Virus record (IMG/VR): IMGVR_UViG_3300045996_002337
Span: 186,001 to 250,000 of that record
DNA length: 64,000 bases
Reading direction: 5' to 3' (one strand)
This document shows positions 7,157 to 62,794 of this stretch, piece after piece. Under the pieces are notes generated by a model, which was given only the letters and a program-made list of their open reading frames with translations, made no database searches and had not been told where the DNA came from. The translations under genes and the position numbers were made by a program. Every line of letters starts with the position of its first letter. Positions within the stretch are counted from its first letter, which is position 1.

Positions 7157-7969
7157 TCAACGTAATGCGTTAACCTGCTGGAGCAGGCTTTCGTGTTTCG
7201 ACCCTGGTGGTAGCACTCCAAGCAGGTGCATCAAGGTCTGTGCATTATGAGGGGCGTGAGCCCTTCCATCATTATTGAAGAAAATGTAGACTTCTTTGCC
7301 GGCTTCTGCAAGTCGACGAATCATGGCTGCATCGTTCTTCAAGTCTTGGTCTGTGTAGTTACCCCAGTATTTACCGGAGGTTTTTGGCCCGTGTCTGCGA
7401 ATGTAGACAAAATCCGCGGTGTCAGTTGGATCTGTTTCAGTGAAACGGTCTGATGCCACAAGCACTGCGTTGTGACGCTTGAGCTCGTCATACGTCTCCC
7501 GAACAAGCCAAGAGGTGTTGCGCACTTCCAGCGCAAGCTTCAAGCCGCTGGAGTTCAGAAATTCAGCAAGCGGGCCAACTCGATCAAGGAGCTTGCTGCT
7601 CGAGCGCTCTGCGAGCTGCACTAGAACTGGACCTCGTTTGTTGACATCAATCTTGTGAATGCCTTCGACGAAGTACTTCATCAGCTCAATGCCGTCTCTT
7701 GTGTCCCCGTCTGAATGCAGCTTGAGCTGACGCGAATGTGTGAATGACTTTGGCGACTTCAGGACAAGCTTGCTATTTGCATGCATCTTAGCACCCCAAC
7801 GCTCAACTGAATCGGGCTTTGGGATGTTGTAGAAGGACGCGTTAATTTCCAACGTGTTGAAGTGGTCAGCGTAGTACTGGAGCAGATCACCTGTTTTCGG
7901 TGGATAAAATGCTCCATTCTGCCAATGGTGGTACGAGTACCCACTACAACCAATATAAACGTTCTTCAT
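7157..7969 (-). CDS. DUF72 domain protein
   Basis: IGCSGYSYHHW, EINASFY, K-x-PK-x-x-TH, ALEVR-x-x-SW, YIRRHG, YIFFNND...AP-x-NA. Confidence 0.9.
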   Translation of the reverse strand: MKNVYIGCSGYSYHHWQNGAFYPPKTGDLLQYYADHFNTLEINASFYNIPKPDSVERWGAKMHANSKLVLKSPKSFTHSRQLKLHSDGDTRDGIELMKYFVEGIHKIDVNKRGPVLVQLAERSSSKLLDRVGPLAEFLNSSGLKLALEVRNTSWLVRETYDELKRHNAVLVASDRFTETDPTDTADFVYIRRHGPKTSGKYWGNYTDQDLKNDAAMIRRLAEAGKEVYIFFNNDGRAHAPHNAQTLMHLLGVLPPGSKHESLLQQVNALR

Positions 7970-9752: not shown

Positions 9753-9879
9753 TGGTGGTGGCGGAAGGAATCGAACCTCCCCTGGCCGTTTATGAGTCGG
9801 ATAACCAATTACGGACGGTTGAGCTAACAACGAAAGGTGCAATCGATGTTTACCGTGCTGTCCACTACACTACGCCACC
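9753..9879 (-). ncRNA. tRNA/Y-RNA hybrid: tRNA acceptor, D and T arms with CCA, and a ~50-nt Ro60-helix-like domain in place of the anticodon arm
   Basis: GGTGGCG/CGCCACC-A-CCA, D arm, T loop TTCGATT; insert contains TCG-TTG[TTAGCT]CAA-C-CG and GGTTATCC/GATTGC, shared with the Y-like family. Confidence 0.6.
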
Positions 9880-11244: not shown

Positions 11245-11319
11245 TGGTGGTGATGGTGGGAATCGGACCCACGACACAGAGCTTATGAGACTCCTGCTTA
11301 ACCATTCAGCTTCATCACC
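11245..11319 (-). tRNA. tRNA-Met/Ile2(CAT)
   Basis: CT-CAT-AA; CCA. Confidence 0.8.
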
Positions 11320-12346: not shown

Positions 12347-12366
12347 ACAGAAATTTATGTCTTAAG

Positions 12367-12448
12367 CTCCACGATCTGGGCTCGAACCAGACTTGATCTT
12401 TCGATCGCGGATTAACAGTCCGCTGCCACACCCGGCGGCTCTCGTGGA
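12367..12448 (-). tRNA. tRNA-Asn(GTT)-like with long variable arm, no encoded CCA, flanks extend the acceptor stem
   Basis: GCGGA-CTGTTAA-TCCGC; GATC-GAAA-GATC variable arm; CTTAAGCTCCACGA/TCGTGGAGCTTAAG 14-bp stem. Confidence 0.65.
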
Positions 12449-12476
12449 GCTTAAGACACTTACATAATGTTCTTTG

Positions 12477-12548
12477 CTCCAGAGGCAGGGATCGAACCTA
12501 CGACGGACGCATTAACAGTGCGCTGCTCTACCGCTGAGCTACACTGGA
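12477..12548 (-). tRNA. tRNA-Asn(GTT), no encoded CCA
   Basis: Canonical cloverleaf; leader TGTTCTTTGC pairs with trailer GCAAAGAACA. Confidence 0.85.
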
Positions 12549-12984: not shown

Positions 12985-13078
12985 TGGCTCCCTCGGACGG
13001 ACTCGAACCGCCATATTACGCCTTACGGCCTTTACGTCTGATTAACAGTCAGGTCTCTTACCATTAGAGTACAAGGGA
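12985..13078 (-). tRNA. tRNA-Asn(GTT) with 24-nt variable region
   Basis: CT-GTT-AA; variable arm GCC-GTAA-GGC; G73; CCA. Confidence 0.8.
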
Positions 13079-15099: not shown

Positions 15100-15804
15100 G
15101 TGACGATGAGAGACTTTCTTGAACAGAACAACACGCTAGTTGTCGGTTTAGCCGTTGGCGGAACCGTGCTTGCGATCATCCTCGGCATTCTTCTGTATGG
15201 AGCTAGGGAACTTCAAGTCGAAACGCTGAAGAGAATTGATCAACCGGCTGTTGGCGCTGTGGAGCTACCAGGGCCTAAGAATCAAATCAGCGACCGTTCG
15301 AAGAAACAGGTGGATACATTGCTAGATGAAACACCCCACATCGTCGGCGGCTGGGTCACGAAGCTCCAGTATGGAAAGACGGAAAACCCCATCATTCACT
15401 TCTGGACAGAGAGTGACACCGTCAAGGACCTGATCATTGAGTTCGGAGAAATTCAGGAGAGTGGACGCGGATCGAGCTCCGCCGAGCTAAACGCGGCGAG
15501 CGAGCAGTCGCTAAGGAATTCTGAAGAAGCCAAAAGCGGTCTCATTAAGTGTGGGCCGTTGAGCGCCACAAACCTTCTTCAAATTGCACCGTCAATCGTC
15601 AACGTTGCAAAGGGAGTCTGCCGAGCAACTATCCCACCATTTGATGAAAACGTTAACCTAGGCGTGGTGGTGCTGATTGACGTTGATCCAAATGACAACA
15701 ATGCGGACATCCAAGCGATTCGCCGCACGCTGCTTCAACTTCAGATTGACGTGTTCAACCGCGATTACCAAGGTCGTGAGACCTGGGCGCGTGCGATAGA
15801 GTGA
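15100..15804 (+). CDS. holin-T-like membrane protein (paralog 3, divergent)
   Basis: TM segment, KSGLIKC...VCRATIPPFDENVNLGVVVLI...LQIDVF; TAAATA at 15075-15080. Confidence 0.55.
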   Translation: MTMRDFLEQNNTLVVGLAVGGTVLAIILGILLYGARELQVETLKRIDQPAVGAVELPGPKNQISDRSKKQVDTLLDETPHIVGGWVTKLQYGKTENPIIHFWTESDTVKDLIIEFGEIQESGRGSSSAELNAASEQSLRNSEEAKSGLIKCGPLSATNLLQIAPSIVNVAKGVCRATIPPFDENVNLGVVVLIDVDPNDNNADIQAIRRTLLQLQIDVFNRDYQGRETWARAIE

Positions 15805-16188: not shown

Positions 16189-16586
16189 TTCAAAATCTCC
16201 ATTTGTTTCTCACGCTCACGTAGACCATCACAAGCTTTGATGGCCCAGTCGACATCCCAGTTAGTAATGGCTTTAAGGGTGGCGCCTTGAACCAACAGCT
16301 TTTTCACACACGGGTCTTTTGCGGCTTTCGCAATACTTTCGTTGGTTGCGGCTCGGGTCTCATGGAAAATGACGAAGTAGAGAAGCGCTGTAATAAGCGG
16401 TGGAAGCCAGATTCCCATCCATGCAATCATGAATTTGCGGATGGCTTCGACAAGAGAGCCAAGACCCCATACGAGTCGATGCGCTCGTCGGGCCCACAGG
16501 CGACGGGTTGCTGTACTTTTCACCGTGAGAATCCTTCTTCTAGAGCCATGACCAGCTTTGGAATGTCGGCGGCATAGAAGCCGCAC
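16185..16586 (-). CDS. hypothetical membrane protein (paralog of 15805..16188)
   Basis: Same ATRRLWARRA and Cys motifs. Confidence 0.6.
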   Translation of the reverse strand: MRLLCRRHSKAGHGSRRRILTVKSTATRRLWARRAHRLVWGLGSLVEAIRKFMIAWMGIWLPPLITALLYFVIFHETRAATNESIAKAAKDPCVKKLLVQGATLKAITNWDVDWAIKACDGLREREKQMEILK

Positions 16587-17317
16587 GAGTTCAACGTATT
16601 GATTTCTACAACCTTCATTCCATCTGGCGTGTCACAGACGTCGATCACAAATGCGGCGTGAGGCTGCCATTCAGCAATTCTATCACGCGCGTAGTCGAAG
16701 AAACACTGGTCAACCTCCGAAGAGTAGATGACCTGGTCGCCGCGCTTGTAGAGCGAAGCCGTGATGATGTCACCGTGTACGACCCAGAAACGGTATTCGG
16801 AGTAGATCACCTTCGGTTTGGTGACTTGAACGAGGGTGTTCTTCGTCAAGGAGTTGCCGTAGTCCTCTTCAAGGACGCAGACCTTTCGCTTCCAGGTGTA
16901 GAATTCTTCCTTCTCGAAAACCTTACCGGCGAATACCTTGCTGTCCTCAATTGGTCGAATGAAGGCGAGATGCTCCTCACCACGTTCAAAGAACGGAAAC
17001 ACCGCGTCCTCGAAACGGCTGACCTTCGAGTCGAAGTTAAGCATATGCTCGCCCCACTTCTCGCGCTGCATTTCAAAGTTGCACGGCTCGAGGTCGAACA
17101 CGCCAGGTGTCCAAATCTTGCGCTTCGCATAGTGCCGGAGGGAGTACGACCCCATGCAGATCACGTTCTTGTGGTCAAGCTCGGGCTCTGGCATGAGGTC
17201 ACCAACGAATGGAACGACCTTGTGAATGGAGTAGGGCAAGCCAAGCCGCTCGAGGGTGTCGAGTAGGGTCTGGTAGGCGGCCTCATTGAAGAGGTTGTTC
17301 TGTAGAATCCAATGCAT
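16520..17317 (-). CDS. ATP-grasp protein, R2K/DUF4343-like
   Basis: FIRP...SKVFAG, SEYRFWVVHG, AFVIDV...VVEINTLNSCGFY. Confidence 0.8.
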   Translation of the reverse strand: MHWILQNNLFNEAAYQTLLDTLERLGLPYSIHKVVPFVGDLMPEPELDHKNVICMGSYSLRHYAKRKIWTPGVFDLEPCNFEMQREKWGEHMLNFDSKVSRFEDAVFPFFERGEEHLAFIRPIEDSKVFAGKVFEKEEFYTWKRKVCVLEEDYGNSLTKNTLVQVTKPKVIYSEYRFWVVHGDIITASLYKRGDQVIYSSEVDQCFFDYARDRIAEWQPHAAFVIDVCDTPDGMKVVEINTLNSCGFYAADIPKLVMALEEGFSR

Positions 17318-17318
17318 G

Positions 17319-17666
17319 TCAGTGCAGCGGCGGGCTGTCGTCGAGGTAGATGTTGTCGTCATCTTCAGCTGTCACTTCTATCAGGTGCAAGATGATCGTC
17401 TGAAGAACTTCAGCATCCAGTTCGTGGATGATTGGGGCCTCTTCTCCGTCACCACCTATTTCGTAGCGCATGAGGTCGCGTGACCCACCCTCAATCGGAT
17501 CCGCGATCACGATGTGCGAAAAGTTCATCAGCTGATAGGAGCTGTCAGGACCAACGGTGAACATGGGCGCGAGGTCCCCAAATTCACCGTCATCGTCGAC
17601 GGTAACTTGTGCGAAGCACTTTTCGCCTTCAACGTCAGGCACACGAAAAATGGCAAGCTTTGACAT
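17319..17666 (-). CDS. hypothetical acidic protein
   Basis: ORF; start MSKLAIF at 17666. Confidence 0.55.
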   Translation of the reverse strand: MSKLAIFRVPDVEGEKCFAQVTVDDDGEFGDLAPMFTVGPDSSYQLMNFSHIVIADPIEGGSRDLMRYEIGGDGEEAPIIHELDAEVLQTIILHLIEVTAEDDDNIYLDDSPPLH

Positions 17667-17950
17667 CACATCACCTCGAAAGCAAAGTTGAGCAGTTCTT
17701 GGGCACCCCATAGATCGAAGGGCACAGGGTCAGGGGTTTCACCGCAGCAGAACTCTTCGAGCTCGGCAGGTGAGAGCTTCGAGAGGGCAATGTCCACCGC
17801 CTTGATGTCAGCTTCAGCATAACGCTCCTCGACGAGATGCATCACGTGGTTAACAACCGATTCCTCGGTCACCCCACGGTAAATGACGCCACTGTCGTAG
17901 GCAATCTCAATGACGGCCTTGATGAGCGATGGGTACTTGTGTGGGATCAT
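17666..17950 (-). CDS. hypothetical protein
   Basis: 94-aa ORF coupled to both neighbours. Confidence 0.6.
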   Translation of the reverse strand: MIPHKYPSLIKAVIEIAYDSGVIYRGVTEESVVNHVMHLVEERYAEADIKAVDIALSKLSPAELEEFCCGETPDPVPFDLWGAQELLNFAFEVM

Positions 17951-19014
17951 TTTGCAAGCTCGTTTGGAATGAAGGCGCGGCCGGCCCGCCAGTGTTTTTG
18001 CGTTTGAACATGATTGGCGCGAACGAACTTTGCCACGCTCTTGCGAAAATCGCCGTAGCTAAACTCACCAGCAATCCGAACCACGTAACCTTCGTCCTTT
18101 TCAAAGTCTAGACTCTTCTCAATGTCACGAACAGTTTTCTCATCCCACATGCCATCATAAAGAACTGGGACAGGTGTTAGGCCGAGCAGCTCACACCAGA
18201 CGATGGTGTCATCCCACCTCAAGCAGCGGTTCTTTGCATCCCAAATGCTAAAGCACATGAAGTATGAAGGCAGGGCGGTGTAGTGAATCGAGTGCTCGGC
18301 CCAGAGGTTCTCGCCGCAAACACGCCAGCCTTCAGGAAGATTGAAGCAGACGTTCTCGATCAGGAACTTCTTGACCCAGGCCCGGTCTTCGCCACCACGG
18401 CTGTCAATCGAACGTGCGTGAATGTGACCATCGCTGTACGCGGTGGTGTTCTCACCGTCCATCTTCTTGGTGATGACTACACGGCGACCTTCAAACTGCG
18501 AGCAGTCCTTCAGGGCTTTGTCGTCGTCTTGTTTTCCAGGAGACCAGGGGAGGTGGAACGTCCGCTCGTACTTGACGTACGAGGTAAACAGATCCAACGC
18601 TCCACCCGCGGCCAGAACTTTCTGTACGGACTCGTCAAAGAAGAGCTCGCCCTTGGCGCGGCGACCGTCAGCAAGTACTGGGTTTCCCCATTTGTCGTAC
18701 TGATGGTCAGGGTAGAAGTGCGGAGGAACCACGATCTTCGTGATGCCTGCTGCTTGACGCACGTCCTCGACCGAGTAGAACGTTTTCTCGCAGAGAAGAT
18801 GATGCAGCTCGCACACGGTCGCGCCGTTCTCGAGATAGTAGCCACCATCTGGCCACAGCCGCCGCTCGAGAATGTGATGCGCGTCGAGCTTGCCCTCAGG
18901 GGTTTGCGCTGCAGTGATTCCGCAGAAAACGCACTTGTGACCATCTCGAAGGAACACACCTTCGCGGAAGTTGTCTCGAGTAAGTAGTTTGGGCTCTGCC
19001 ATGTTATTCTCCAT
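17947..19014 (-). CDS. HNH-domain / RNA ligase fusion protein
   Basis: N-terminal CVFC...DAHHI...NGATVC-x-x-HH; C-terminal ligase motifs KMDGEN, CGEN, EGYVVR, K-F-V-R. Confidence 0.85.
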   Translation of the reverse strand: MENNMAEPKLLTRDNFREGVFLRDGHKCVFCGITAAQTPEGKLDAHHILERRLWPDGGYYLENGATVCELHHLLCEKTFYSVEDVRQAAGITKIVVPPHFYPDHQYDKWGNPVLADGRRAKGELFFDESVQKVLAAGGALDLFTSYVKYERTFHLPWSPGKQDDDKALKDCSQFEGRRVVITKKMDGENTTAYSDGHIHARSIDSRGGEDRAWVKKFLIENVCFNLPEGWRVCGENLWAEHSIHYTALPSYFMCFSIWDAKNRCLRWDDTIVWCELLGLTPVPVLYDGMWDEKTVRDIEKSLDFEKDEGYVVRIAGEFSYGDFRKSVAKFVRANHVQTQKHWRAGRAFIPNELAK

Positions 19015-19032
19015 TTACAGAGGATTATAACG

Positions 19033-19260
19033 TCAATAGAGGCTCTTGTACATAGTTGCCAGCATCTGTTTGGCAACTTTGCGACCTTCTTCCGTAATGA
19101 ACGCATGGTTAAAGTGATGATTGGAACAATGGCGGGCGGCCAGTCCGTTTCGCTCAAGCTCAATGATGTGGCCAGCGTGGGCGTCGACAGACATCGGCGT
19201 TTGCCCTTCATCCAAGGCAAGCAGGACAATAGCTGCCCCATGACATGAGAGTGAAGACAT
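19033..19260 (-). CDS. hypothetical protein
   Basis: 75-aa ORF. Confidence 0.5.
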   Translation of the reverse strand: MSSLSCHGAAIVLLALDEGQTPMSVDAHAGHIIELERNGLAARHCSNHHFNHAFITEEGRKVAKQMLATMYKSLY

Positions 19261-20072: not shown

Positions 20073-20831
20073 ATGGCAAAACTTTTCGCCGTGCTTTTGC
20101 TCACGCTGCTGACTGGTTGTTTTAATCACGTTGATGAGTCAAAGATTCCACTGACTGAGGATGAGCTGGCATACATTGCTGGGCACCCTACGGTCACCTT
20201 CGCGGCCGAGGATAATCGACCTCCATACATTTTTGTGGAGGGCGATCAAGTGAAGGGGCTTTCGACCGAGTACATTGAGCTGATCGCAAAGAAGACGGGT
20301 CTTAAATTCCAGCCTGTTAAAACGGGCAGCTACATCGAAAGCATGGACGCATTAGAAATGGAAAAGGTAGATGTGATGACCTCCATCAGGCCAACTCCGG
20401 AAAATACTCGGTTTATGGGCTTCACCCCGCCAATTGCATATCAGGGCGGTGTTTACGTTTTTCGGGTAAACACTCTTCCTCGTTCTCCGCTTACAACTGG
20501 ACTTCACAAAGGGTGTCCAGCCCGAGGCTACCTCGTGTCTAGATTTCCGGACATGCAGCTCGTTGACACAGTTGATGATGAAGAAGCGATTTCCCTTCTT
20601 CATAAAGGGCTGCTAGACGGAGTGGTCACTGATGCTGGAACAGCACGATACCTAACAAACAAAAGTGACGTTCAAGTGCGGTGGGCTTCCATTAACTTCG
20701 ACTTCCCGTTTTCATTTGCATACAACAGCAATGCTGTCACGCTTGGCAGCATTCTAACAAAAGCTATCTCCTCAATCACCCCCGAGGATAAGCACACCAT
20801 CAATTCACGTTGGTTAGTAGGAACAAAATAA
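20073..20831 (+). CDS. family-3 (amino-acid/PAAT-type) periplasmic substrate-binding lipoprotein
   Basis: LLTGC lipobox; LTEDELAYI...AEDNRPPYIF...G-x-x-x-EYIELIAKKTGLKF; stop overlaps the next ATG (TAATG); TAAATA at 20038-20043. Confidence 0.85.
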   Translation: MAKLFAVLLLTLLTGCFNHVDESKIPLTEDELAYIAGHPTVTFAAEDNRPPYIFVEGDQVKGLSTEYIELIAKKTGLKFQPVKTGSYIESMDALEMEKVDVMTSIRPTPENTRFMGFTPPIAYQGGVYVFRVNTLPRSPLTTGLHKGCPARGYLVSRFPDMQLVDTVDDEEAISLLHKGLLDGVVTDAGTARYLTNKSDVQVRWASINFDFPFSFAYNSNAVTLGSILTKAISSITPEDKHTINSRWLVGTK

Positions 20832-21493
20832 TGGTCATGAAGGTAACTCCCACCACTACCGCCCGTGAAGAGCGCACGTGGAAAACTCTAGCAATTGCCG
20901 CGTGTGGCGTTGCAGCCCTAACTGCGGGGCTCGTCGTGTACAAGGGGTGGGACGTGAAGGAACGAGTTGACAATCTGCCACCTGTTATCTCAAACACAAA
21001 ATTTCAAATTTCTGATCGTTCAAAAGACGCGCTGGTTGAATACATGCGTGAAGAGCCGCTCATTGTCGGCGTTGCAGCTGTTGAAGTTGATCTTGCAAAG
21101 AACACGCGCCGCACTGTTTTCTTTCAGGCAAGCTTGTCAGCTCTTCAGCGGGTGTGGGATGATTATCTAACACGCAGAGCCCCACCACCTGCAGTCTTTT
21201 CAGCTTCTTCACCTGCCCAGCAAAATGAGCGCATGGCGCACGTGATCAATGGCAACTTTGACTGTCGCCCATTTAGAGACACTGTCGGCTTCAAATACTA
21301 TCCAGAGGCAGAGAACTTTGCACCCTGGATCTGCTCAATTTCCGTTCCGCCTGGATTTACCGGCGGGGATTTTAGCGGCTTCATTACGTTTTACTTAACG
21401 CGAGAACCAGAAGACGCTGAAATGAAGAAGATGACAAAGAACGCAATTGAGCTGTCAGCTTTGATTCACCGTCGCGATATCCAGAAGAAATAA
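20831..21493 (+). CDS. holin-T-like membrane protein (paralog 4)
   Basis: TM segment, VINGNFDC...ICSISVPPGFTGGDFSGFITFYL. Confidence 0.6.
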   Translation: MVMKVTPTTTAREERTWKTLAIAACGVAALTAGLVVYKGWDVKERVDNLPPVISNTKFQISDRSKDALVEYMREEPLIVGVAAVEVDLAKNTRRTVFFQASLSALQRVWDDYLTRRAPPPAVFSASSPAQQNERMAHVINGNFDCRPFRDTVGFKYYPEAENFAPWICSISVPPGFTGGDFSGFITFYLTREPEDAEMKKMTKNAIELSALIHRRDIQKK

Positions 21494-21507: not shown

Positions 21508-22149
21508 ATGCAAAACAGACCAGACCGCCTACAGTTTTGGAAACTGATCACCATCGTCTTTACGCTCATTAGCATTGTGGCCTTGGGCATCTTTGGATTT
21601 CAGCAACGTCAACCGATCGCTCTTCAAATTGTCGGGAAGCGAGTCAATTTAGATAGTGGACGAATGCCGGCACCAAGTGACGCGTCTATCAGCGAGCTGC
21701 AGGATTTTACCGAAGCCGGGGGAAACATCATGGGCATCAACGTCATTCGAGTGGATTTTAGAATGAACACCCGCAATACGACGTTCCGTCATTTTAAGGA
21801 ACCTGCAGTAACTGCTGCTTGGGAAAAATTTCTTGAGACGCAGCAGGTGGCACCGCTGTTTGGCTCTAACGAACAGACAAACCAACGTCTGATTAACCTG
21901 ATCAATGGTCAATTTCTGTGCGTTAATACCACGAACACCGTGGCGGCGCAATTGATTCCTGAAGTTGCATCACACAGTCAAACTACGTGTATGGCACCGA
22001 TCCCGCCTGGCTACGGCGACTTCGTCGGCTTCATCAATGTGTTCCTTCGCAAGGCACCCTCAGTGCAGGAGATCACTGAGCTTGAAGAATCAACTAGAAA
22101 ATTGGCGATTGACATCTACGAACGAGACGTCGTAAAAACTAAAAAATGA
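21508..22149 (+). CDS. holin-T-like membrane protein (paralog 5)
   Basis: TM segment, LINGQFLC...TCMAPIPPGYGDFVGFINVFL. Confidence 0.6.
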   Translation: MQNRPDRLQFWKLITIVFTLISIVALGIFGFQQRQPIALQIVGKRVNLDSGRMPAPSDASISELQDFTEAGGNIMGINVIRVDFRMNTRNTTFRHFKEPAVTAAWEKFLETQQVAPLFGSNEQTNQRLINLINGQFLCVNTTNTVAAQLIPEVASHSQTTCMAPIPPGYGDFVGFINVFLRKAPSVQEITELEESTRKLAIDIYERDVVKTKK

Positions 22150-33617: not shown

Positions 33618-34712
33618 TCAGGTCAGAGCACCAGCAATTGCTTCGCGGCGAGCCTGCTCAATTGCCTGACCGAGCTCCTTACCTGGAGGAATATCAGGAA
33701 AATCTGCAGCTTTAACTGGCTTTGTAACTGAGGCTGCCCTCCACAGATCAAAAGAGTTCACCTTAGGTGACTCACCAATCGATGGCATCAGTTCAACTGC
33801 TTGCACCAAATCATCGAAGGTAGAGCCTTCGCTCCATGCCTTCGCTGCTTTCAGTAAGTTGAAGACGTCATCAACGGTGCGTTCCATGGTTCGAACCCGA
33901 TTCACATTCTCAAACAGCGTTCGCGTGCGAGTGTCAGCGCTGACACGAACAGTGGTCGAAGACGGAACAGCTGCGAGCGCAGTGTGAAACATGACGCGTT
34001 CTGCTTCATCAACAAACACCGAGACTACTGACGCAGCGGCGATGACAGATTTCAGTCGAGCTGCATCAATGTGACCATACAGGCCTTCGAAGAACAAAAC
34101 GTTTTCATCGCAGTGCATGGCCTTCATGAGCCAGAAAAAGCGCCACGGTGTTTCTTCTTGGAAGACCTTGTGGAGCTCTGCCCAGAAGCGTTCAGCGGGC
34201 AGTTGATTCAGATCGCCGTTCTCGACCATGCGCTTCGCCAAATCCATCGTTTCGGTTGCAACACTGAAGTTGTCGTAGCGTGCAAAGAAGCGGGCTAGCC
34301 GCACCACCCGCAGTGGATCTTCACCGAAGGCAGCAGAGACGTGGCGCAGAACGCGCGCTTCCAGATCTTGCTGTCCACCCCAAGGATCGATGATTTTGCC
34401 GTCCTCATCCTCAGCCATCGCATTGATGGTCAGGTCTCGTCTCGACAGGTCGTCGGCCAGGGTCACACCGTCGGTTTCAACTGCGAAGCCGAGGTAGCCC
34501 TTGCCCGTCTTGCGCTCGGTTCTAGCAAGGGCGAACTCCTCACCACGTTCGTTCAGAAACACGGGGAAATCCGCACCCACCTGCTGAAAGCCCATGGCAA
34601 TCATTTGCTCGGGCGTGGAGCCGACAACGACGTAGTCAAAATCCTTCGGATCTCGCCCCATCAGCTTGTCACGAACTGCACCACCGACCGTGTAGACCTG
34701 ATATGTTTTCAT
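33618..34712 (-). CDS. cca: tRNA nucleotidyltransferase (class II CCA-adding enzyme)
   Basis: VGGAVRD...[45 protein letters not shown]. Confidence 0.92.
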
Positions 34713-34748
34713 AGATGCATTATACACTGCCCACTCTAGGTTGTAAAC

Positions 34749-37905: not shown

Positions 37906-38841
37906 TTAGATAAGGTCAGCCTTATTTATTGTCAGCGGTTCCACAGTTCGGAATTCTTTTTCAGTCGCCTGATAGAAAGTCCAGCTGCCCAGTTCAATGC
38001 AGGTAAGGGCACACCAGCCCCGGACCTTTATGTTGCCGCTGTAGCTCTGCTCACCGAATGAACCGTACGCACATGTATCGATGTTCGTCTGTCCGACAAT
38101 CGTGACTGGCCGCTGCATGATGGTGTGACCACTGATGATGTGCGACAACTTGTCGTTGAAGACAGCAGTGCCGTTTCGCAGCTTCAATGTGCGAATGATC
38201 TTTTCGCGGTTGCTTAGGTCGGCACGATAAAAATCGTAGAACAGATGGCGGCCCCACAGAAAAGAATCACCATCCCCGTTCTGCTTGGTCGCCAAGGCGT
38301 GAACCTTCTGCCCATCCGACAGAATTTCATCGGTTATGACGTTGCCTGGCGGCAGTTCGGCGTGGATCACATGGAACTTCTTCCCATCCGGTCGATTGAT
38401 CGTGATCATGAAAGGAAGGTTCTCAACGAAGGTCAGCAGGTCAATCAGCTCCATGTCCTCGTCACTGATCAGTGGCATGTGCTCAACACGCCCAGCTTCC
38501 TTCGCTTCAAGAGCGCGAGAAACGTTCCACGCCTCAGCTCCCCACATGCCACCGTTCTGGAACCAAAATTGCCCCATGTAGCCACCGCGAAACGCTTCAA
38601 GCATCATCTGCTCGTGGTTAGAGAGGACTGCATGGAACCAGGGCTTGCGTAGCAGGGCAAGGCAGCCAAGTGAATCTGGTCCGCGATCGACGAGGTCACC
38701 AACTGAGAACATTCGGTCCTTTGTGGAATCAAATGCAAGGTTCTCAAGCAGGTTCTCGAAGCATGCAAGTGATCCATGCAGGTCACCGATTACGAAGTCC
38801 CTACCATCGTTGTTTGGTTCAAATGTTTTGAGAATTGGCAT
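37906..38841 (-). CDS. metallophosphoesterase (lambda-PP/PphA-like Ser/Thr phosphatase)
   Basis: GDLHG, VGDLVDRGPDS, LSNHE, IHAE, SGHT. Confidence 0.9.
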   Translation of the reverse strand: MPILKTFEPNNDGRDFVIGDLHGSLACFENLLENLAFDSTKDRMFSVGDLVDRGPDSLGCLALLRKPWFHAVLSNHEQMMLEAFRGGYMGQFWFQNGGMWGAEAWNVSRALEAKEAGRVEHMPLISDEDMELIDLLTFVENLPFMITINRPDGKKFHVIHAELPPGNVITDEILSDGQKVHALATKQNGDGDSFLWGRHLFYDFYRADLSNREKIIRTLKLRNGTAVFNDKLSHIISGHTIMQRPVTIVGQTNIDTCAYGSFGEQSYSGNIKVRGWCALTCIELGSWTFYQATEKEFRTVEPLTINKADLI

Positions 38842-45895: not shown

Positions 45896-47413
45896 TTACT
45901 TCTTCATGATTTCAATCAGCACCAGCTCGTGCATTGCACGGGTAGAAGCGACGTAGCAGAGGTTGTTTTCCTGCACAACTTCCCATTCCTGCTTCGCAAA
46001 ACCAGACGGGCCGGTCTGAAGCCAGACCACCTTCTTCCACTCACGGCCCTTGCTCTTGTGAATCGAGGAGAGCAGAACCACCGGCTTGAGGTTGTCCTTG
46101 TCGTTGGTGCCGAAGATCGCATCGATCTCGGCGATCACCGCGGTCTGTGGGGGCTGGGTGATGGTGCCCTTTGCGATCACCCGATCGATGATGACTCGCA
46201 GACATTCAACCTTGTCGGCCACATCTTGAGCGCGCTTCGGTTGCTCCTTCTCGGTGAACTTCTTCACTTCACGCTCGAGGAAATCGTCGAGCTTGGTGAT
46301 CAGTGCGTCGATGGACTTGACCTTCCAGCGATTTGCAAGCTGCTTGAGACCGGCCCCGATTTCGCGGCCTTCAACACGGGCCGGAATACCTGCGGCGATC
46401 AGTTGGTAGACGTACTTGATGAGCGGTGCGTTGAAGCGGCAGAGGATGGCATCGCCGACCTTGACCTCGTTCTGCAGCTCGGCGATTTCAACCGTGCGAA
46501 CCACGCCTTCAGGTGCGGTCTCAGCTGCTTGAATGTGGTTTACCCATTGTTGTGAGTAGAGAACAACCGCCTTCGGGCAACGGAAGGTCGTGGTCAGCGG
46601 CATGCGGGTTGCATTGACTGCATCACCGATCTTGTCGAGAGCATCTGCATCAGCGCCAGTGAAACCGTAGATCGCTTGATGACGATCACCAACAGCAACG
46701 AGGCGAGAGGTGTCTTTCATCATCCGCAGGGCCATTTCGCGGCGGCTAGCATTCGTGTCTTGAGCCTCGTCGATCAGCACCCAATCGTACTTGTCGAAGG
46801 TGACATTGAAGAACAACGGGGCAAAAATCATGTCATCAAAGTCGATGACCTTGCGGCATGCATTGGCGGATTCCATGAAGAGGTCCTTCGCCAGCATGAT
46901 GATAGTGTCGGTGTTGTCAATGCCGCGGTATTCGTCGAAGCACTCCACGTTGAAGTGGGTGATCAGCTGCATCCAGACGCTGCGGTCGTTTTGGTCAGAG
47001 ATGACGCCGACAGCGGCTTGCTTGGCGTAGGATACCAGCTGAATAACCGGGCTTTCGAGAACACCGTAGTCCATCTGTCGGAACGTCATGTCGCGAAAAA
47101 TGGAGCGGCACTTGTCACCATCGACCTTACAGAACTTGTCTGCAACCCGACGCCATGCTCGCATCCCTGCGGCATGCATCGTGGAAACTTCCAGCCCGTT
47201 GCGCATTCCAGCGCGACCTGCAATTTCTTCCGCGATCTTCTTGTTGTATGCACCGAAGAAGATCTTCCCCGTCATGAGCTTGAGCGCCTCAATCAGGGTG
47301 GTGGTCTTGCCCGCACCAGCGACCGCCTCCAGAATGCAGGAACCCTTCCCGTTAATCACCCAGTCATAAAAACCGGCTTGTTGGAGGGATGGCTTGAGTT
47401 TCGGAGTCTTCAT
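45896..47413 (-). CDS. SF1 (UvrD/Rep-like) helicase
   Basis: AVAGAGKTT, LIDEAQD, VGD-x-x-QAIYGF, TFRCP, SIHKSKGREW, YVASTRA. Confidence 0.92.
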   Translation of the reverse strand: MKTPKLKPSLQQAGFYDWVINGKGSCILEAVAGAGKTTTLIEALKLMTGKIFFGAYNKKIAEEIAGRAGMRNGLEVSTMHAAGMRAWRRVADKFCKVDGDKCRSIFRDMTFRQMDYGVLESPVIQLVSYAKQAAVGVISDQNDRSVWMQLITHFNVECFDEYRGIDNTDTIIMLAKDLFMESANACRKVIDFDDMIFAPLFFNVTFDKYDWVLIDEAQDTNASRREMALRMMKDTSRLVAVGDRHQAIYGFTGADADALDKIGDAVNATRMPLTTTFRCPKAVVLYSQQWVNHIQAAETAPEGVVRTVEIAELQNEVKVGDAILCRFNAPLIKYVYQLIAAGIPARVEGREIGAGLKQLANRWKVKSIDALITKLDDFLEREVKKFTEKEQPKRAQDVADKVECLRVIIDRVIAKGTITQPPQTAVIAEIDAIFGTNDKDNLKPVVLLSSIHKSKGREWKKVVWLQTGPSGFAKQEWEVVQENNLCYVASTRAMHELVLIEIMKK

Positions 47414-55696: not shown

Positions 55697-55783
55697 TGGA
55701 GGAGAATAACGGAATCGAACCGTCACCTGTAAACAAATGGGCTGGCTTTCGAAACCAGTTACGCGCCATGCGTCCTATTCTCC
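55697..55783 (-). tRNA. tRNA-Ser(CGA)
   Basis: TT-CGA-AA, long variable arm, CCA; 5' part overlaps the NADAR stop. Confidence 0.8.
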
Positions 55784-56211
55784 ATGACTAACTTCCAGAG
55801 ATCAGCTCGAATTTCCATCAGCATGATCCCCAGCCTGTTCTTTCCAACACCTCGGCAAACTCCCCAGTACGTGTCGTTCCAGTGGTTAGTTTCCTCGATG
55901 TAAGCATCTCCTGTTGCCAAGAGCTGCGTCATAAACGGTTCCTGTGAGAACTTCTGGATCAAGAGGTCTCTCATGACGTCCTCTTTGATCTGTTCCCAAT
56001 CTTCTCGAATCTGAATCACGCGACCAAACTTCTTTGCCTCTGCGCCAGAAGCCGCCCTTGCGATCTTCTTTCTAAGCTCAATGTCAAGCGTCTTTGCCGC
56101 CTGGTATGCGTGTTCAGTGGATGGAAACGCGACGCCTTCAAACTGGACCCATACGGACCAAAAGTTTGACAGGAACCTATGGTCTCCGCTAAATCCCTTG
56201 ATCTCGTCCAT
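55759..56211 (-). CDS. NADAR (YbiA/DUF1768) family protein
   Basis: FLSNF...STEHAYQAAK...KFSQ...LLATG...E-x-x-x-W-x-D-x-YWG...GKNRLG-x-x-LME-x-R. Confidence 0.92.
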   Translation of the reverse strand: MDEIKGFSGDHRFLSNFWSVWVQFEGVAFPSTEHAYQAAKTLDIELRKKIARAASGAEAKKFGRVIQIREDWEQIKEDVMRDLLIQKFSQEPFMTQLLATGDAYIEETNHWNDTYWGVCRGVGKNRLGIMLMEIRADLWKLVMENRTHGA

Positions 56212-56224
56212 CTTAGTTTCCTAT

Positions 56225-56332
56225 TGGCTCCCCAACCTGGGCTCGAACCAGGGACCTGCGGATTAACTAGAACACCCGATAAACCAGATGTTCGGTGTCA
56301 GTCCGACGCTCTACCAACTGAGCTATTGGGGA
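56225..56332 (-). tRNA. tRNA-Asn(GTT) interrupted by a 32-nt insertion in the anticodon loop
   Basis: Canonical Asn body; loop reads CTG[ACACCGAACATCTGGTTTATCGGGTGTTCTAG]TTAA; removing 32 nt restores CT-GTT-AA. Confidence 0.8.
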
Positions 56333-59437: not shown

Positions 59438-59568
59438 AGCAACAAAGGAGCGATAACGAGTCTGCCTTTCGGCGAGGCGGCTGTCCTACCATTAGACTAC
59501 AGCTCATTGAGCCGGCGGGAATCGAACCCACGTTAACTGCTTGGGATAAACGTCATCTATCGGTTGCT
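59438..59568 (-). ncRNA. YrlA-like Y RNA (permuted tRNA module)
   Basis: GCAA-C-CGA...T arm (GTGGG TTCGATT CCCGC), acceptor closed by a loop (CGGCTC AAT GAGCTG), D arm (GTCT AATGGTA GGAC)...GCC-GAAA-GGC...TTG-TTGC. Confidence 0.75.
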
Positions 59569-60181: not shown

Positions 60182-60255
60182 TGGTTGCGGAGCCACGGAA
60201 TCGAACCGGCCCTTAGGGTTATGAGCCCCACGTGCTACCATCACACTCGCCCGCA
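60182..60255 (-). tRNA. initiator-like tRNA-fMet(CAT), irregular
   Basis: GGG/CCC anticodon stem, 1:72 mismatch, CT-CAT-AA, CCA. Confidence 0.7.
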
Positions 60256-60631: not shown

Positions 60632-60749
60632 TGGTGGGGACTCGTGGGCTCGAACCACGGACCTACTAGATGTCTACTTTCTGCATGGACAATGGGCGCC
60701 GTTCCATGCAGTTTCGCTCTAATCGCTCTACCAACTGAGCTAAGTCCCC
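60632..60749 (-). ncRNA. tRNA-like RNA with a hairpin inserted in the anticodon loop
   Basis: Near-consensus acceptor, D and T arms plus CCA; loop holds a CTGCATGGA/TCCATGCAG hairpin; no clean 7-nt anticodon loop. Confidence 0.65.
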
Positions 60750-62520: not shown

Positions 62521-62613
62521 TGTTGAACGACGGGATTCGAACCCGCACATTGCGCCGGTGATTAGCCGGTGCTAAGTATACCAATTCCTCACGTTATGCA
62601 AACACGTTCAACA
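62521..62613 (-). ncRNA. tRNA-like RNA, anticodon AAT, 9-bp acceptor, 12-nt insert before the D arm
   Basis: TGTTGAACG/CGTTCAACA; CT-AAT-CA loop; T arm intact; no CCA. Confidence 0.55.
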
Positions 62614-62663
62614 AAATCAACCATGCGCGGCTACCAATTACGCCACGAGTGCATTAAAACAAG

Positions 62664-62794
62664 AGCAACAAAGGGCGATAACGAAAAGCCTTTCGGCGAG
62701 CCGGCTGCCTTACCACTTGGCGACTATCAATTGCTCGATAGGTAGGATTCGAACCTACGTTTAGCTGGATAGATAATCATCATCAACGGTTGCT
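62664..62794 (-). ncRNA. YrlA-like Y RNA (permuted tRNA module)
   Basis: GCAA-C-CG...T arm (GTAGG TTCGAAT CCTAC), 7-bp acceptor capped by GCAA tetraloop, D arm (GCC AAGTGGTAA GGC)...GCC-GAAA-GGC...TTG-TTGC. Confidence 0.8.

What the first reader, a model, noticed from the sequence alone, without database searches (positions are those of the whole stretch)
16520..19014. RNA-repair kit: HNH-RNA ligase fusion next to an R2K-type ATP-grasp, plus CCA enzyme, NADAR and a nucleotidyltransferase elsewhere
Seen: ligase motifs I, III, IV and V intact with an N-terminal Zn/HNH domain, and an ATP-grasp gene ~630 bp downstream. Known: T4 Rnl1/Pnk repair anticodon-nuclease cuts, and R2K ATP-grasps are linked to conflict and translation systems. 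Inference: a nuclease-ligase fusion is a natural candidate for excising and re-ligating the short anticodon insertions in this phage's tRNAs.
Basis: partly seen in the sequence, partly recalled or inferred. Interest (0 to 1): 0.6.

Follow-up and report, generated by a model that had tools for sequence, protein, structure and literature searches.

The report
HNH nuclease fused to RNA ligase
A jumbo phage gene joins an intact HNH nuclease to a small Rnl2-like RNA ligase; this fusion family is already described and untested at the bench, is most likely an RNA-repair enzyme, and shows no sign of being a dedicated splicer of the phage's odd tRNAs.

Summary
Window 17947-19014(-) encodes a 355-aa protein with a zinc-HNH nuclease domain (res 9-90), a conserved connector and an RNA-ligase nucleotidyltransferase domain (147-355). 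Window 16520-17362(-) encodes an R2K-clade ATP-grasp. The CCA enzyme and NADAR are also real.

The fusion matches phrog_24030 over its whole length. It occurs in many jumbo phages, an archaeal virus and bacterial chromosomes, and Iyer et al. 2021 already noted it.

New here:
- All fusions form one clade nested among bacterial ligase-only orthologues that sit in RtcB-PrfH-ligase-kinase repair operons.
- The fusions have lost the kinase neighbour.
- Both active sites are invariant in 45 fusions.
- One huge phage encodes the same two domains as overlapping genes in reversed order.

So nuclease and ligase probably work together on RNA.

The ATP-grasp adjacency is not conserved: the orthologue lies 17-92 kb away, or is absent, in relatives. 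The tRNA-splicing idea is not supported. tRNA genes with anticodon-loop insertions are real. But 7 of 11 fusion-bearing genomes lack them, including two bacteria. GAP32, which lacks the fusion, has them. The nearest HNH folds are DNases. No RNA data exist.

The parts
17947..19014 (-). Gene for the 355-aa HNH-RNA ligase fusion protein, stop codon included
   Evidence: Whole-length match to phrog_24030, E 4e-135.
18745..18990 (-). Zinc-HNH (beta-beta-alpha-Me) nuclease domain, residues 9-90. C28-x2-C31, D44-A-H46-H47, N63, C68, H72.
   Evidence: PHROG HNH hits. VIA Z 6.3 TagI, 6.1 EcoKMcrA, 5.9 Cap5, 5.6 IscB. Residues invariant in 45 fusions.
18577..18744 (-). Conserved connector, residues 91-146 (YDKWGN, GELFxDESVQKVL). 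Absent from ligase-only homologues.
   Evidence: Alignments A1 and A2. Mean pairwise identity 61%. pLDDT about 90.
17950..18576 (-). Minimal ATP-dependent RNA ligase nucleotidyltransferase domain, residues 147-355. Motif I K184-x-D-G-x-N, III E235, IV E308-G, V K329. No Rnl2-type C-terminal domain.
   Evidence: PF09414 E 7e-27. VIA Z 15.1 to T4 Rnl2 residues 1-233, 14.4 to MthRnl and NgrRnl, 12.7 to Rnl1, about 11.5 to DNA ligases.
19024..19052 (-). Sigma-70-like promoter match (TGTACA-17-TATAAT), 10 nt upstream of the ligase start codon
   Evidence: The number of such sites in the region is no higher than in shuffles, so only its position is suggestive.
17666..17950 (-). 94-aa ORF whose start overlaps the ligase stop. 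No family match.
   Evidence: No homologue next to the ligase in related loci.
17319..17711 (-). 130-aa ORF with no family match. Weak homologues follow the ligase in L005 and L017.
16520..17362 (-). R2K-clade ATP-grasp (predicted peptide or amino-acid ligase). A neighbour here only; not a conserved partner.
   Evidence: PF14243 65.6 bits, phrog_7313 E 2e-64. The orthologue lies 17-92 kb from the ligase, or is absent, in relatives.

Best explanation
The gene encodes a self-contained, two-active-site nucleic-acid enzyme of a known but biochemically untested family. It has an McrA/Cap5-like zinc-HNH nuclease, a conserved connector and a minimal Rnl2-like ATP-dependent RNA ligase. Shown: both catalytic centres are intact and invariant. 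The ligase domain descends from bacterial RNA-repair ligases that sit in RtcB-PrfH-ligase-kinase operons. All fusions form one clade that has lost the kinase neighbour and has no other conserved neighbour. The same HNH subfamily also occurs as a separate gene overlapping the stop of a ligase-only gene in another huge phage. Inferred: the ligase seals 3'-OH/5'-phosphate breaks in tRNA or other translation RNAs damaged in phage-host conflict. HNH nucleases leave exactly 3'-OH and 5'-phosphate ends. The HNH domain therefore probably supplies, on the same substrate, the metal-dependent cut or end-trimming that makes ends ligatable without a kinase. The downstream R2K ATP-grasp is an independent protein-modifying enzyme that happens to lie nearby in this lineage.
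For: Domain identity. Invariance of C28, C31, H46, H47, N63, C68, H72 and K184, D186, E235, E308, K329 in 45 fusions from phages, bacteria and archaea, with the HNH (63% mean identity) conserved at least as well as the ligase (56%). Ligase-only orthologues (52-57% identical) lie in RtcB / RF-1(PrfH) / ligase / AAA_33 kinase operons, and the kinase abuts the ligase in about 33 loci. That operon type is a recognised RNA-repair and ribosome-rescue context (PMC6514570). All 40 fusions fall in one clade (SH-aLRT 95) nested in that grade. No fusion locus has an adjacent kinase or any shared neighbour. A second, independent linkage exists in LR745206, where the 214-aa ligase gene L230:1630-2274 is overlapped by 8 nt by a 106-aa HNH gene at 2267-2587. 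The genome encodes separate DNA-ligase and Rnl5-type ligase genes, so this enzyme is not the replicative ligase.
Against: No biochemical data exist for any family member. The nearest solved HNH folds are all DNA endonucleases; the tRNA-cutting retron HNH scores only Z 2.1. The swap of kinase for HNH is essentially one evolutionary event, so it has no statistical weight. Trimming ends would lose nucleotides, which is hard to reconcile with faithful repair of an anticodon loop. A predicted complex between the stand-alone HNH and the ligase-only protein of phage G006 gave no verdict. In G006 and LR756501 the two genes are far apart.
Confidence: 0.45

Rival explanations
1. Two independent weapons in one polypeptide (the view of Iyer et al. 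2021). The HNH domain is a DNase aimed at host or superinfecting-phage DNA, and the ligase separately repairs cleaved RNA.
For: Stated in PMC7824862 section 3.4.9. The best structural matches of the N-domain are the DNA endonucleases TagI, EcoKMcrA, Cap5, IscB and ScoMcrA. There are weak NCBIfam hits to a PT-DNA restriction endonuclease and to the IscB HNH.
Against: The fusion is a lone gene among housekeeping genes in the Leptospira and Imbroritus chromosomes, with no immunity gene nearby. The HNH is more conserved than the ligase across phages, bacteria and archaea, unlike fast-evolving conflict DNases. The same HNH subfamily is found almost only fused to, or next to, this ligase.
Confidence: 0.25
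2. The fusion is a single-polypeptide splicing enzyme: the HNH cuts out the short hairpin insertions in the anticodon loops of phage tRNAs (56225-56332, 60632-60749) and the ligase rejoins the halves.
For: The insertions are real, and exact removal of 32 nt restores a canonical CU-GUU-AA loop. HNH cleavage chemistry gives ends that an ATP-dependent ligase can join without healing enzymes. Insertion-bearing tRNAs occur in G000, G002, G004, SCTP-2 and G006; in G006 the stand-alone HNH lies 2.8 kb from them inside the tRNA cluster. An HNH that cuts tRNA exists in retron I-A (PMC12475279). Short tRNA introns in huge phages are still called 'enigmatic' (PMC6784885).
Against: Seven genomes with the fusion have no such tRNA: G001, G005, RsoM2USA, CcrBL9, ME3 (only 4 tRNAs), Leptospira and Imbroritus. 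GAP32 has two insertion-bearing tRNAs but no HNH or ligase of this family. With HNH plus ligase 5 of 12 genomes carry inserts; with neither gene 1 of 5 does, which is no association. The inserts differ in sequence, length (16-50 nt) and position (30/31 to 38/39), so one conserved nuclease would be unlikely to recognise them all. No RNA runs are available.
Confidence: 0.07
3. The HNH domain is a homing-type endonuclease that mobilises the ligase gene. It is a selfish fusion with no enzymatic cooperation between the domains.
For: The family has a patchy, horizontally transferred distribution across phages, bacteria and archaea, in unrelated contexts. HNH presence and absence differ between syntenic phage lineages: L009-L016 against L024-L040. 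The stand-alone relative in G006 sits in a tRNA cluster, a classic site for phage homing endonucleases (my own knowledge of T4 and T5).
Against: Sequence conservation is very high, and a fixed connector and a confident inter-domain geometry (pTM 0.82) are kept over deep divergence. No recognisable DNA-binding module is present. Homing endonucleases usually decay or diversify quickly.
Confidence: 0.1
4. The enzyme acts on DNA or RNA:DNA hybrids. The HNH nicks, and an Rnl2-like ligase reseals nicks that carry a 3' ribonucleotide, as in primer or ribonucleotide processing or in programmed genome nicks.
For: Rnl2-type ligases seal duplex nicks with a 3'-OH RNA strand (established biochemistry; nicked-duplex structure 2hvr at Z 14.8). 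The DNA-type HNH relatives include the phage T5 nicking enzyme SciA at low Z. In the L009 lineage the gene lies directly after a DNA ligase gene.
Against: The ancestors sit in RtcB-PrfH RNA-repair operons. The Rnl2 C-terminal domain needed for nick recognition is absent. The phage already has a DNA ligase.
Confidence: 0.08

Closest known systems
HNH-Rnl2-family fusions of jumbo phages (Burroughs & Aravind 2016, NAR 44:8525; Iyer et al. 2021, PMC7824862; phrog_24030)
   Same: Same architecture and same family. The match to phrog_24030 covers the whole length (E 4e-135). Identity is 50-62% to the proteins of Ralstonia RsoM2USA, Caulobacter CcrBL9/CcrSC, Salicola SCTP-2 and Acinetobacter ME3, and 29% to Halogranum HGTV-1.
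   Different: Nothing structural; this is a new member. The literature only notes the fusion and guesses that the HNH is a DNase. The nesting within kinase-linked repair ligases, the solo bacterial copies and the reversed ligase->HNH gene pair are added here.
T4 RNA ligase 2 (Rnl2) and kinetoplastid REL1
   Same: Best structural match of the ligase domain: 1s68 at Z 15.1, 176 residues, rmsd 3.0, aligned from the first Rnl2 residue; REL1 at Z 13.2. Motifs I, III, IV and V are present.
   Different: Only 16-17% identity. There is no C-terminal domain: the protein ends about 25 residues after motif V. Motif V reads K-x-V-R rather than K-x-K. An HNH domain and connector sit at the N-terminus. Rnl3 (MthRnl) and Rnl5 (NgrRnl) score within 1 Z unit, so the clade assignment is not exclusive.
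T4 Rnl1 + Pnkp anticodon-break repair
   Same: A phage-encoded ATP-dependent RNA ligase, presumably countering tRNA damage.
   Different: Rnl1 is a poorer structural match (Z 12.7). No Pnkp is adjacent. T4 heals 2',3'-cyclic-P/5'-OH ends with a kinase-phosphatase, whereas here a nuclease domain takes the partner's place.
Bacterial RtcB-PrfH RNA-repair / ribosome-rescue operons extended by an ATP-dependent ligase and a P-loop kinase
   Same: The ligase domain is 52-57% identical to the ligase of these operons and branches from within them.
   Different: Those ligases are about 210 aa with no HNH and are followed directly by an AAA_33 kinase. The fusion has no RtcB, PrfH or kinase neighbour.
McrA/TagI-type and Cap5/IscB HNH nucleases
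   Same: Same beta-beta-alpha-Me fold with a CxxC...C zinc site and the H-N-H catalytic residues.
   Different: Z is only 5.4-6.3 and identity 15-27%. Pfam HNH models do not reach significance (PF13391, E 0.14). Those enzymes cut DNA and carry other sensor or targeting domains.
R2K-clade ATP-grasp enzymes (RimK / CDC123 relatives; Burroughs et al. 2015, PMC4431377)
   Same: The neighbour gene matches PF14243 and PF18299 above their cut-offs. The family is known in caudate and jumbo phages and is predicted to add peptide tags to proteins.
   Different: No evidence ties it to the ligase; its position relative to the ligase varies from genome to genome.

Membership tests
ATP-dependent RNA ligase (covalent nucleotidyltransferase superfamily, PF09414) | Pfam RNA_ligase match above the gathering score | tested here: met
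   95 bits against a cut-off of 27, E 7e-27.
ATP-dependent RNA ligase (covalent nucleotidyltransferase superfamily, PF09414) | Motif I lysine (KxDGxN) and motifs III, IV and V | tested here: met
   K184, D186, E235, E308/G309 and K329 are invariant in 24 and in 45 homologues.
ATP-dependent RNA ligase (covalent nucleotidyltransferase superfamily, PF09414) | Nucleotidyltransferase fold closer to RNA ligases than to DNA ligases | tested here: met
   Z 15.1 Rnl2, 14.4 Rnl3 and Rnl5, 13.2 REL1, 12.7 Rnl1, against about 11.5 for DNA ligases.
ATP-dependent RNA ligase (covalent nucleotidyltransferase superfamily, PF09414) | ATP-dependent adenylylation and sealing of RNA 3'-OH/5'-P ends | not testable with these tools
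   Needs biochemistry.
T4 Rnl2 family in the strict sense | C-terminal domain required for nick sensing | tested here: not met
   The model aligns only to Rnl2 residues 1-233, and the protein ends at residue 355, about 25 residues after motif V.
Rnl5 (DraRnl/NgrRnl, TIGR02306) | N-terminal OB-like domain plus a TIGR02306 match | tested here: not met
   No NCBIfam TIGR02306 hit, and the N-terminus is an HNH. A different gene of this genome (C1:278746-280107) does meet it, with PF21189 OB and TIGR02306 at 153 bits.
T4 Rnl1 family | Closest sequence or fold relationship to Rnl1 | tested here: not met
   No Rnl1 family match in the Pfam or NCBIfam scans. Structural Z 12.7 is below Rnl2, Rnl3 and Rnl5.
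HNH (beta-beta-alpha-Me) nuclease | Catalytic His, Asn and metal-binding His, plus zinc-binding cysteines | tested here: met
   H46/H47, N63, H72, C28, C31 and C68 are 100% conserved in 45 fusions.
HNH (beta-beta-alpha-Me) nuclease | Profile match to HNH families | tested here: inconclusive
   PHROG HNH families score E 1.4e-6 to 1e-3. Pfam HNH_2 scores only E 0.14, and the NCBIfam hits are far below their cut-offs.
HNH (beta-beta-alpha-Me) nuclease | Fold similarity to solved HNH nucleases | tested here: met
   The top 19 VIA rows are all HNH nucleases, Z 6.3-3.2. The Z values are modest but the list is homogeneous.
HNH (beta-beta-alpha-Me) nuclease | Substrate (DNA or RNA) and end chemistry | not testable with these tools
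   The nearest folds are DNases. An RNA-cutting HNH precedent exists (PMC12475279).
R2K-clade ATP-grasp | Pfam R2K match above the gathering score | tested here: met
   PF14243 65.6 bits against 26.3; PF18299 52.9 bits against 26.2.
Conserved RNA-repair operon (ligase plus ATP-grasp as a 'kit') | Gene adjacency kept in relatives | tested here: not met
   No ATP-grasp lies within 10 kb of the fusion in 19 viral loci. The orthologue is 73, 92 and 17 kb away or absent in G001, G004, G005 and G002, and 50-237 kb away in RsoM2USA, XacN1 and LR756501.
tRNA splicing system (endonuclease + ligase serving intron-bearing tRNAs) | Co-occurrence of the enzyme with insertion-bearing tRNA genes | tested here: not met
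   With HNH plus ligase, 5 of 12 genomes carry such tRNAs. With neither gene, 1 of 5 does (GAP32).
tRNA splicing system (endonuclease + ligase serving intron-bearing tRNAs) | Spliced tRNA products in RNA data | not testable with these tools
   No RNA run holds this sequence.

The most novel reading that the evidence does not exclude
The HNH-ligase, fused or as a gene pair, is a protein-only RNA cut-and-rejoin enzyme. Its substrates would include the short hairpin insertions that interrupt anticodon loops of tRNA genes in many huge phages. That would explain the 'enigmatic' phage tRNA introns and would add a bacterial-virus RNA splicing pathway that needs neither a ribozyme nor the archaeal/eukaryal endonuclease.
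Probability: 0.07. Interest if true: 0.85.

Novelty: new member of a known kind. Interest (0 to 1): 0.35.

Why it matters
No member of the HNH-RNA ligase family has been assayed, although it is spread across jumbo phages, an archaeal virus and bacterial chromosomes. If the two invariant active sites do work on one substrate, the enzyme would be a compact heal-and-seal or cut-and-seal RNA tool. It would be a kinase-free route for repairing RNA broken by metal-dependent defence nucleases. As found here, however, the gene is an ordinary member of a described family, and the proposed link to the phage's interrupted tRNAs is not borne out. The interrupted tRNA genes themselves are widespread in huge phages whether or not the fusion is present. 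They are the more open question.

Tried and rejected
- Sequence search of both proteins against PDB chains found nothing useful.
- Megablast of the locus against the phage collection gave no match.
- BLAST of the 56225 tRNA against five related phage records returned only generic D-arm matches and no orthologous insertion.
- The sequencing-run search found two DNA metagenomes with small shares and no RNA run. Read laying was therefore not used, and no expression or splicing evidence could be obtained.
- Complex prediction of the stand-alone HNH (L209:2874-3215) with the ligase-only protein (L030:10004-10639) of phage G006 returned 'no answer', score 0.00. That is no evidence either way.
- Burroughs & Aravind 2016 (PMC5062991) is not held in the library. 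Its content is cited only through Iyer et al. 2021.
- The promoter/terminator scan is no better than shuffles.
- I considered and rejected filing the ligase under Rnl1, Rnl5 or strict Rnl2 (see Membership tests).
- I rejected a conserved ligase/ATP-grasp operon.
- I considered that the MAG hits might all be misbinned phages. The complete Leptospira and Imbroritus chromosomes, with housekeeping neighbours, rule that out.
- The two large protein searches (search for homologous proteins, the search of protein representatives) were not needed and were not run. No alternative genetic code was used.
Full report
**Setting.** The window is bases 186001-250000 of a 349,660-bp jumbo-phage record from IMG/VR, estimated 97% complete. 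The genome carries 51 tRNA genes and a tmRNA gene; 47 of the tRNA genes lie in the window. Genes around the finding run on the minus strand and overlap at their ends.

ORF 17947-19014(-) gives a 355-aa protein.
- Pfam places RNA_ligase (PF09414) on residues 178-331, E 7e-27.
- PHROGs matches the whole length to phrog_24030 'RNA ligase', E 4e-135. Residues 14-91 match several HNH endonuclease families, best E 1.4e-6.
- I aligned it with 23 relatives from IMG/VR, 15 of them fusions and 8 ligase-only (alignment A1). The HNH signature (CxxC, DAHH, N, C, H) is kept in every fusion, and ligase motifs I, III, IV and V are invariant.
- In a wider set of 45 fusions from phages, bacteria and archaea, C28, C31, H46, H47, N63, C68, H72, K184, D186, E235, E308 and K329 are all 100% conserved. 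Mean pairwise identity is 63% for the HNH, 61% for the connector and 56% for the ligase.
- ORF 16520-17362(-) is an R2K-clade ATP-grasp: PF14243 65.6 bits, phrog_7313 E 2e-64.
- The CCA-adding enzyme (33618-34727) and NADAR (55759-56211) are confirmed.

**Structure.**
- An AlphaFold2 model built on A1 has mean pLDDT 89.5 and pTM 0.82.
- Residues 144-340 align best to the nucleotidyltransferase domain of T4 Rnl2 (Z 15.1, 176 residues, rmsd 3.0), starting at the first Rnl2 residue. Archaeal Rnl3 and Naegleria Rnl5 score 14.4, REL1 13.2, Rnl1 12.7 and DNA ligases about 11.5. The domain is therefore an RNA-type ligase, Rnl2-like as the literature files it. It lacks Rnl2's C-terminal domain.
- The N-terminal 150 residues were folded alone (pLDDT 91). 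They match only HNH nucleases: TagI 6.3, EcoKMcrA 6.1, Cap5 5.9, IscB 5.6, then VcaM4I, ScoMcrA, GVE2 HNH and Cas9 HNH domains. All of these cut DNA. The tRNA-cutting retron HNH scores Z 2.1 and the related Septu PtuB 2.9.

**The family is already described.** tblastn finds the full-length fusion in several phages.

| Phage | Identity |
|---|---|
| Ralstonia phage RsoM2USA | 62% |
| Caulobacter phages CcrBL9, CcrSC and relatives | 56-59% |
| Salicola phage SCTP-2 | 55% |
| Acinetobacter phage ME3 | 50% |
| Two uncultured huge phages | 54% and 37% |
| Archaeal virus HGTV-1 | 29% |

- Ligase-only versions occur in XacN1, Atu_ph07 and others.
- Iyer et al. [quoted passage not shown] They suggest the HNH attacks host or superinfecting DNA (PMC7824862).
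- The same paper lists R2K ATP-grasps in jumbo phages.

**What the relatives add.**
- A scan of one genome per prokaryotic species found the fusion in complete bacterial chromosomes (Leptospira sp. 'Mane', Imbroritus primus), in Variovorax, and in many bacterial and archaeal MAGs.
- In the two complete chromosomes its neighbours are unrelated housekeeping genes: SPFH, MatE, an AraC-type sensor, TctC and a GNAT. No gene family recurs next to the fusion.
- Ligase-only orthologues that are 52-57% identical sit in a conserved operon in Pseudoalteromonas, Kangiella, Hahella, Enhygromyxa and others. The operon is RtcB, an RF-1-domain protein (PrfH type), the ligase, and an AAA_33 P-loop kinase. The kinase start abuts or overlaps the ligase stop in about 33 loci. 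RtcB-PrfH is a recognised RNA-repair and ribosome-rescue context (PMC6514570).
- A maximum-likelihood tree of the ligase domain (95 sequences) puts all 40 fusions in one clade (SH-aLRT 95), nested within the kinase-linked grade. Sixteen ligase-only sequences lie inside that clade, most of them viral, which implies later loss of the HNH.
- The HNH subfamily is found almost only with this ligase. In the 635-kb phage LR745206 a 214-aa ligase-only gene is overlapped by 8 nt by a 106-aa stand-alone HNH of the same subfamily, so the domain order is reversed. In phage G006 a 114-aa stand-alone copy lies in the tRNA cluster.
- These facts argue that nuclease and ligase are functional partners, and that the ligase's ancestral job was RNA repair.
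- The kinase-for-HNH exchange suggests that the nuclease supplies 5'-phosphate and 3'-OH ends. It is one evolutionary event and remains an inference.

**The 'kit' is not an operon.**
- No ATP-grasp lies within 10 kb of the fusion in 19 viral loci.
- The ATP-grasp orthologue is 73 kb (G001), 92 kb (G004) and 17 kb (G005) from the ligase, and is absent from G002. It is about 50 kb away in RsoM2USA and about 150 kb away in XacN1.
- The other repair-type genes are scattered across the genome:
  - an Rnl5-type ligase at C1:278.7 kb;
  - a DNA ligase at 283.7 kb;
  - RlaP at 287 kb;
  - two AAA_33 kinases at 331 and 342 kb.
- There is no RtcB.

**The splicing inference.**
- The tRNA-like genes are real. 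ARAGORN with introns allowed finds 56225-56332 (Asn GUU, 32-nt insert) and 60632-60749 (40-nt insert holding a 9-bp perfect hairpin). Rfam's tRNA model scores them 55 and 48.5 bits.
- Alignment with the normal tRNA-Asn at 12476-12548 places the insert between U33 and G34, with a one-base ambiguity. Exact removal restores CU-GUU-AA.
- Reversed-sequence controls give 2 candidates in 1.8 Mb.
- The phyletic pattern does not follow the enzyme. Short inserts were scored by ARAGORN, or as full-model Rfam hits of 100 nt or more.

| Genome | This ligase family | This HNH subfamily | Insertion-bearing tRNA |
|---|---|---|---|
| G000 (this phage) | yes | fused | yes |
| G002 | yes | fused | yes |
| G004 | yes | fused | yes |
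| SCTP-2 | yes | fused | yes (tRNA-Asn, 45 nt) |
| G006 | yes | separate gene | yes (two, with homologous 37- and 40-nt hairpins) |
| G001 (71% complete) | yes | fused | no |
| G005 | yes | fused | no |
| RsoM2USA (40 tRNAs) | yes | fused | no |
| CcrBL9 (28 tRNAs) | yes | fused | no |
| ME3 (4 tRNAs) | yes | fused | no |
| Leptospira chromosome | yes | fused | no |
| Imbroritus chromosome | yes | fused | no |
| G010 (52% complete) | yes | none found | no |
| GAP32 | no | no | yes (two, 49- and 50-nt inserts with a common core) |
| Bambus, RHph_TM30, Tunturi_5, CcrPW | no | no | no |

- The inserts differ in sequence, length and position. The enzyme is therefore neither necessary nor sufficient for such genes.
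- No RNA run holds the locus, so splicing itself could not be examined.
- Points that keep the idea alive at low probability:
  - HNH end chemistry suits an ATP-dependent ligase.
  - A tRNA-cutting HNH exists (PMC12475279).
  - Lak-phage tRNA introns remain 'enigmatic' (PMC6784885).

**Verdict.** The gene is a genuine, intact HNH-RNA ligase fusion and a new member of a family already noted in the literature. It is most likely a stand-alone RNA-repair enzyme whose nuclease and ligase act together. The ATP-grasp is a chance neighbour. The tRNA-splicing role is unsupported.

Noticed in passing
window 56225-56332(-), 60632-60749(-); weaker candidates 9753-9879(-), 62522-62730(-): tRNA-like genes with perfect acceptor and T arms and an encoded CCA are interrupted in the anticodon loop by 32- and 40-nt hairpins. 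Both pass Rfam's tRNA gathering score. Similar genes occur in SCTP-2 (tRNA-Asn, 45 nt), G002, G004, G006 (two homologous hairpins) and GAP32 (two inserts sharing the core AATTTCACAGCAACCA). They are too short for group I introns, and I saw no bulge-helix-bulge motif.
   Followed up: partly
window 12366-12448(-), 12985-13078(-): Two tRNA-Asn(GUU) genes of 83 and 94 nt carry 10- and 21-nt expansions of the variable region, one of them a GAAA-capped hairpin. Class-I tRNAs with long variable arms are also common in relatives: 6 in G001, 6 in G005 and 11 in part of G006.
   Followed up: partly
window 59447-59563(-); G000:C1:~181.4-183.1 kb (outside the window): A Y-RNA-like (YrlA, RF02553) match covers the full model at 39 bits, below the gathering score of 69, E 3e-6. 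The genome also encodes a 571-aa TROVE/Ro60-like ORF next to a second NADAR gene. Together they may form a phage Ro-Y RNA module.
   Followed up: partly
G000:C1:258611-258769 and 259276-259675 (outside the window): Two adjacent tRNAs carry a CUA anticodon (amber suppressor type), and a tmRNA gene has the tag ANEANYRMAA.
   Followed up: no
G000:C1:278746-280107, 283680-284981, 287141-288163 (outside the window): A second RNA ligase of the DraRnl/Rnl5 type (PHA02142 OB domain plus TIGR02306), an ATP-dependent DNA ligase and an RlaP nucleotidyltransferase lie within 10 kb of each other.
   Followed up: partly
L230:1630-2587 (phage LR745206.1, 465129-466086): A ligase-only gene and a stand-alone HNH gene of the same subfamily overlap by 8 nt, in the reverse order to the fusion.
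   Followed up: yes
L226 (Tunturiibacter phage Tunturi_5), L044/L045/L047, L224/L232 (GAP32): The R2K ATP-grasp lies near RNA-repair or tRNA features in other phages. In Tunturi_5 it is next to an annotated 'tRNA splicing ligase'. In one IMG/VR lineage it is 2.4 kb from a ligase-only gene. In GAP32 it is about 500 bp from an insertion-bearing tRNA. These are too few cases to call a link.
   Followed up: partly
window 11248-11319(-), 60186-60254(-): Rfam tRNA hits that ARAGORN did not report, at 60.6 and 29.4 bits.
   Followed up: no
window 37906-38841(-), 45896-47413(-), 7157-7969(-): A calcineurin-like metallophosphoesterase (a possible RNA end-healing enzyme), a UvrD-type helicase and a DUF72 protein.
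   Followed up: no
window 15100-15804(+), 20810-21493(+), 21508-22149(+): Three plus-strand ORFs set among minus-strand genes appear, from reading their translations, to share an N-terminal hydrophobic segment and a motif like 'ISDRSK...', which suggests a small paralogous family. They were not scanned against any family library.
   Followed up: no
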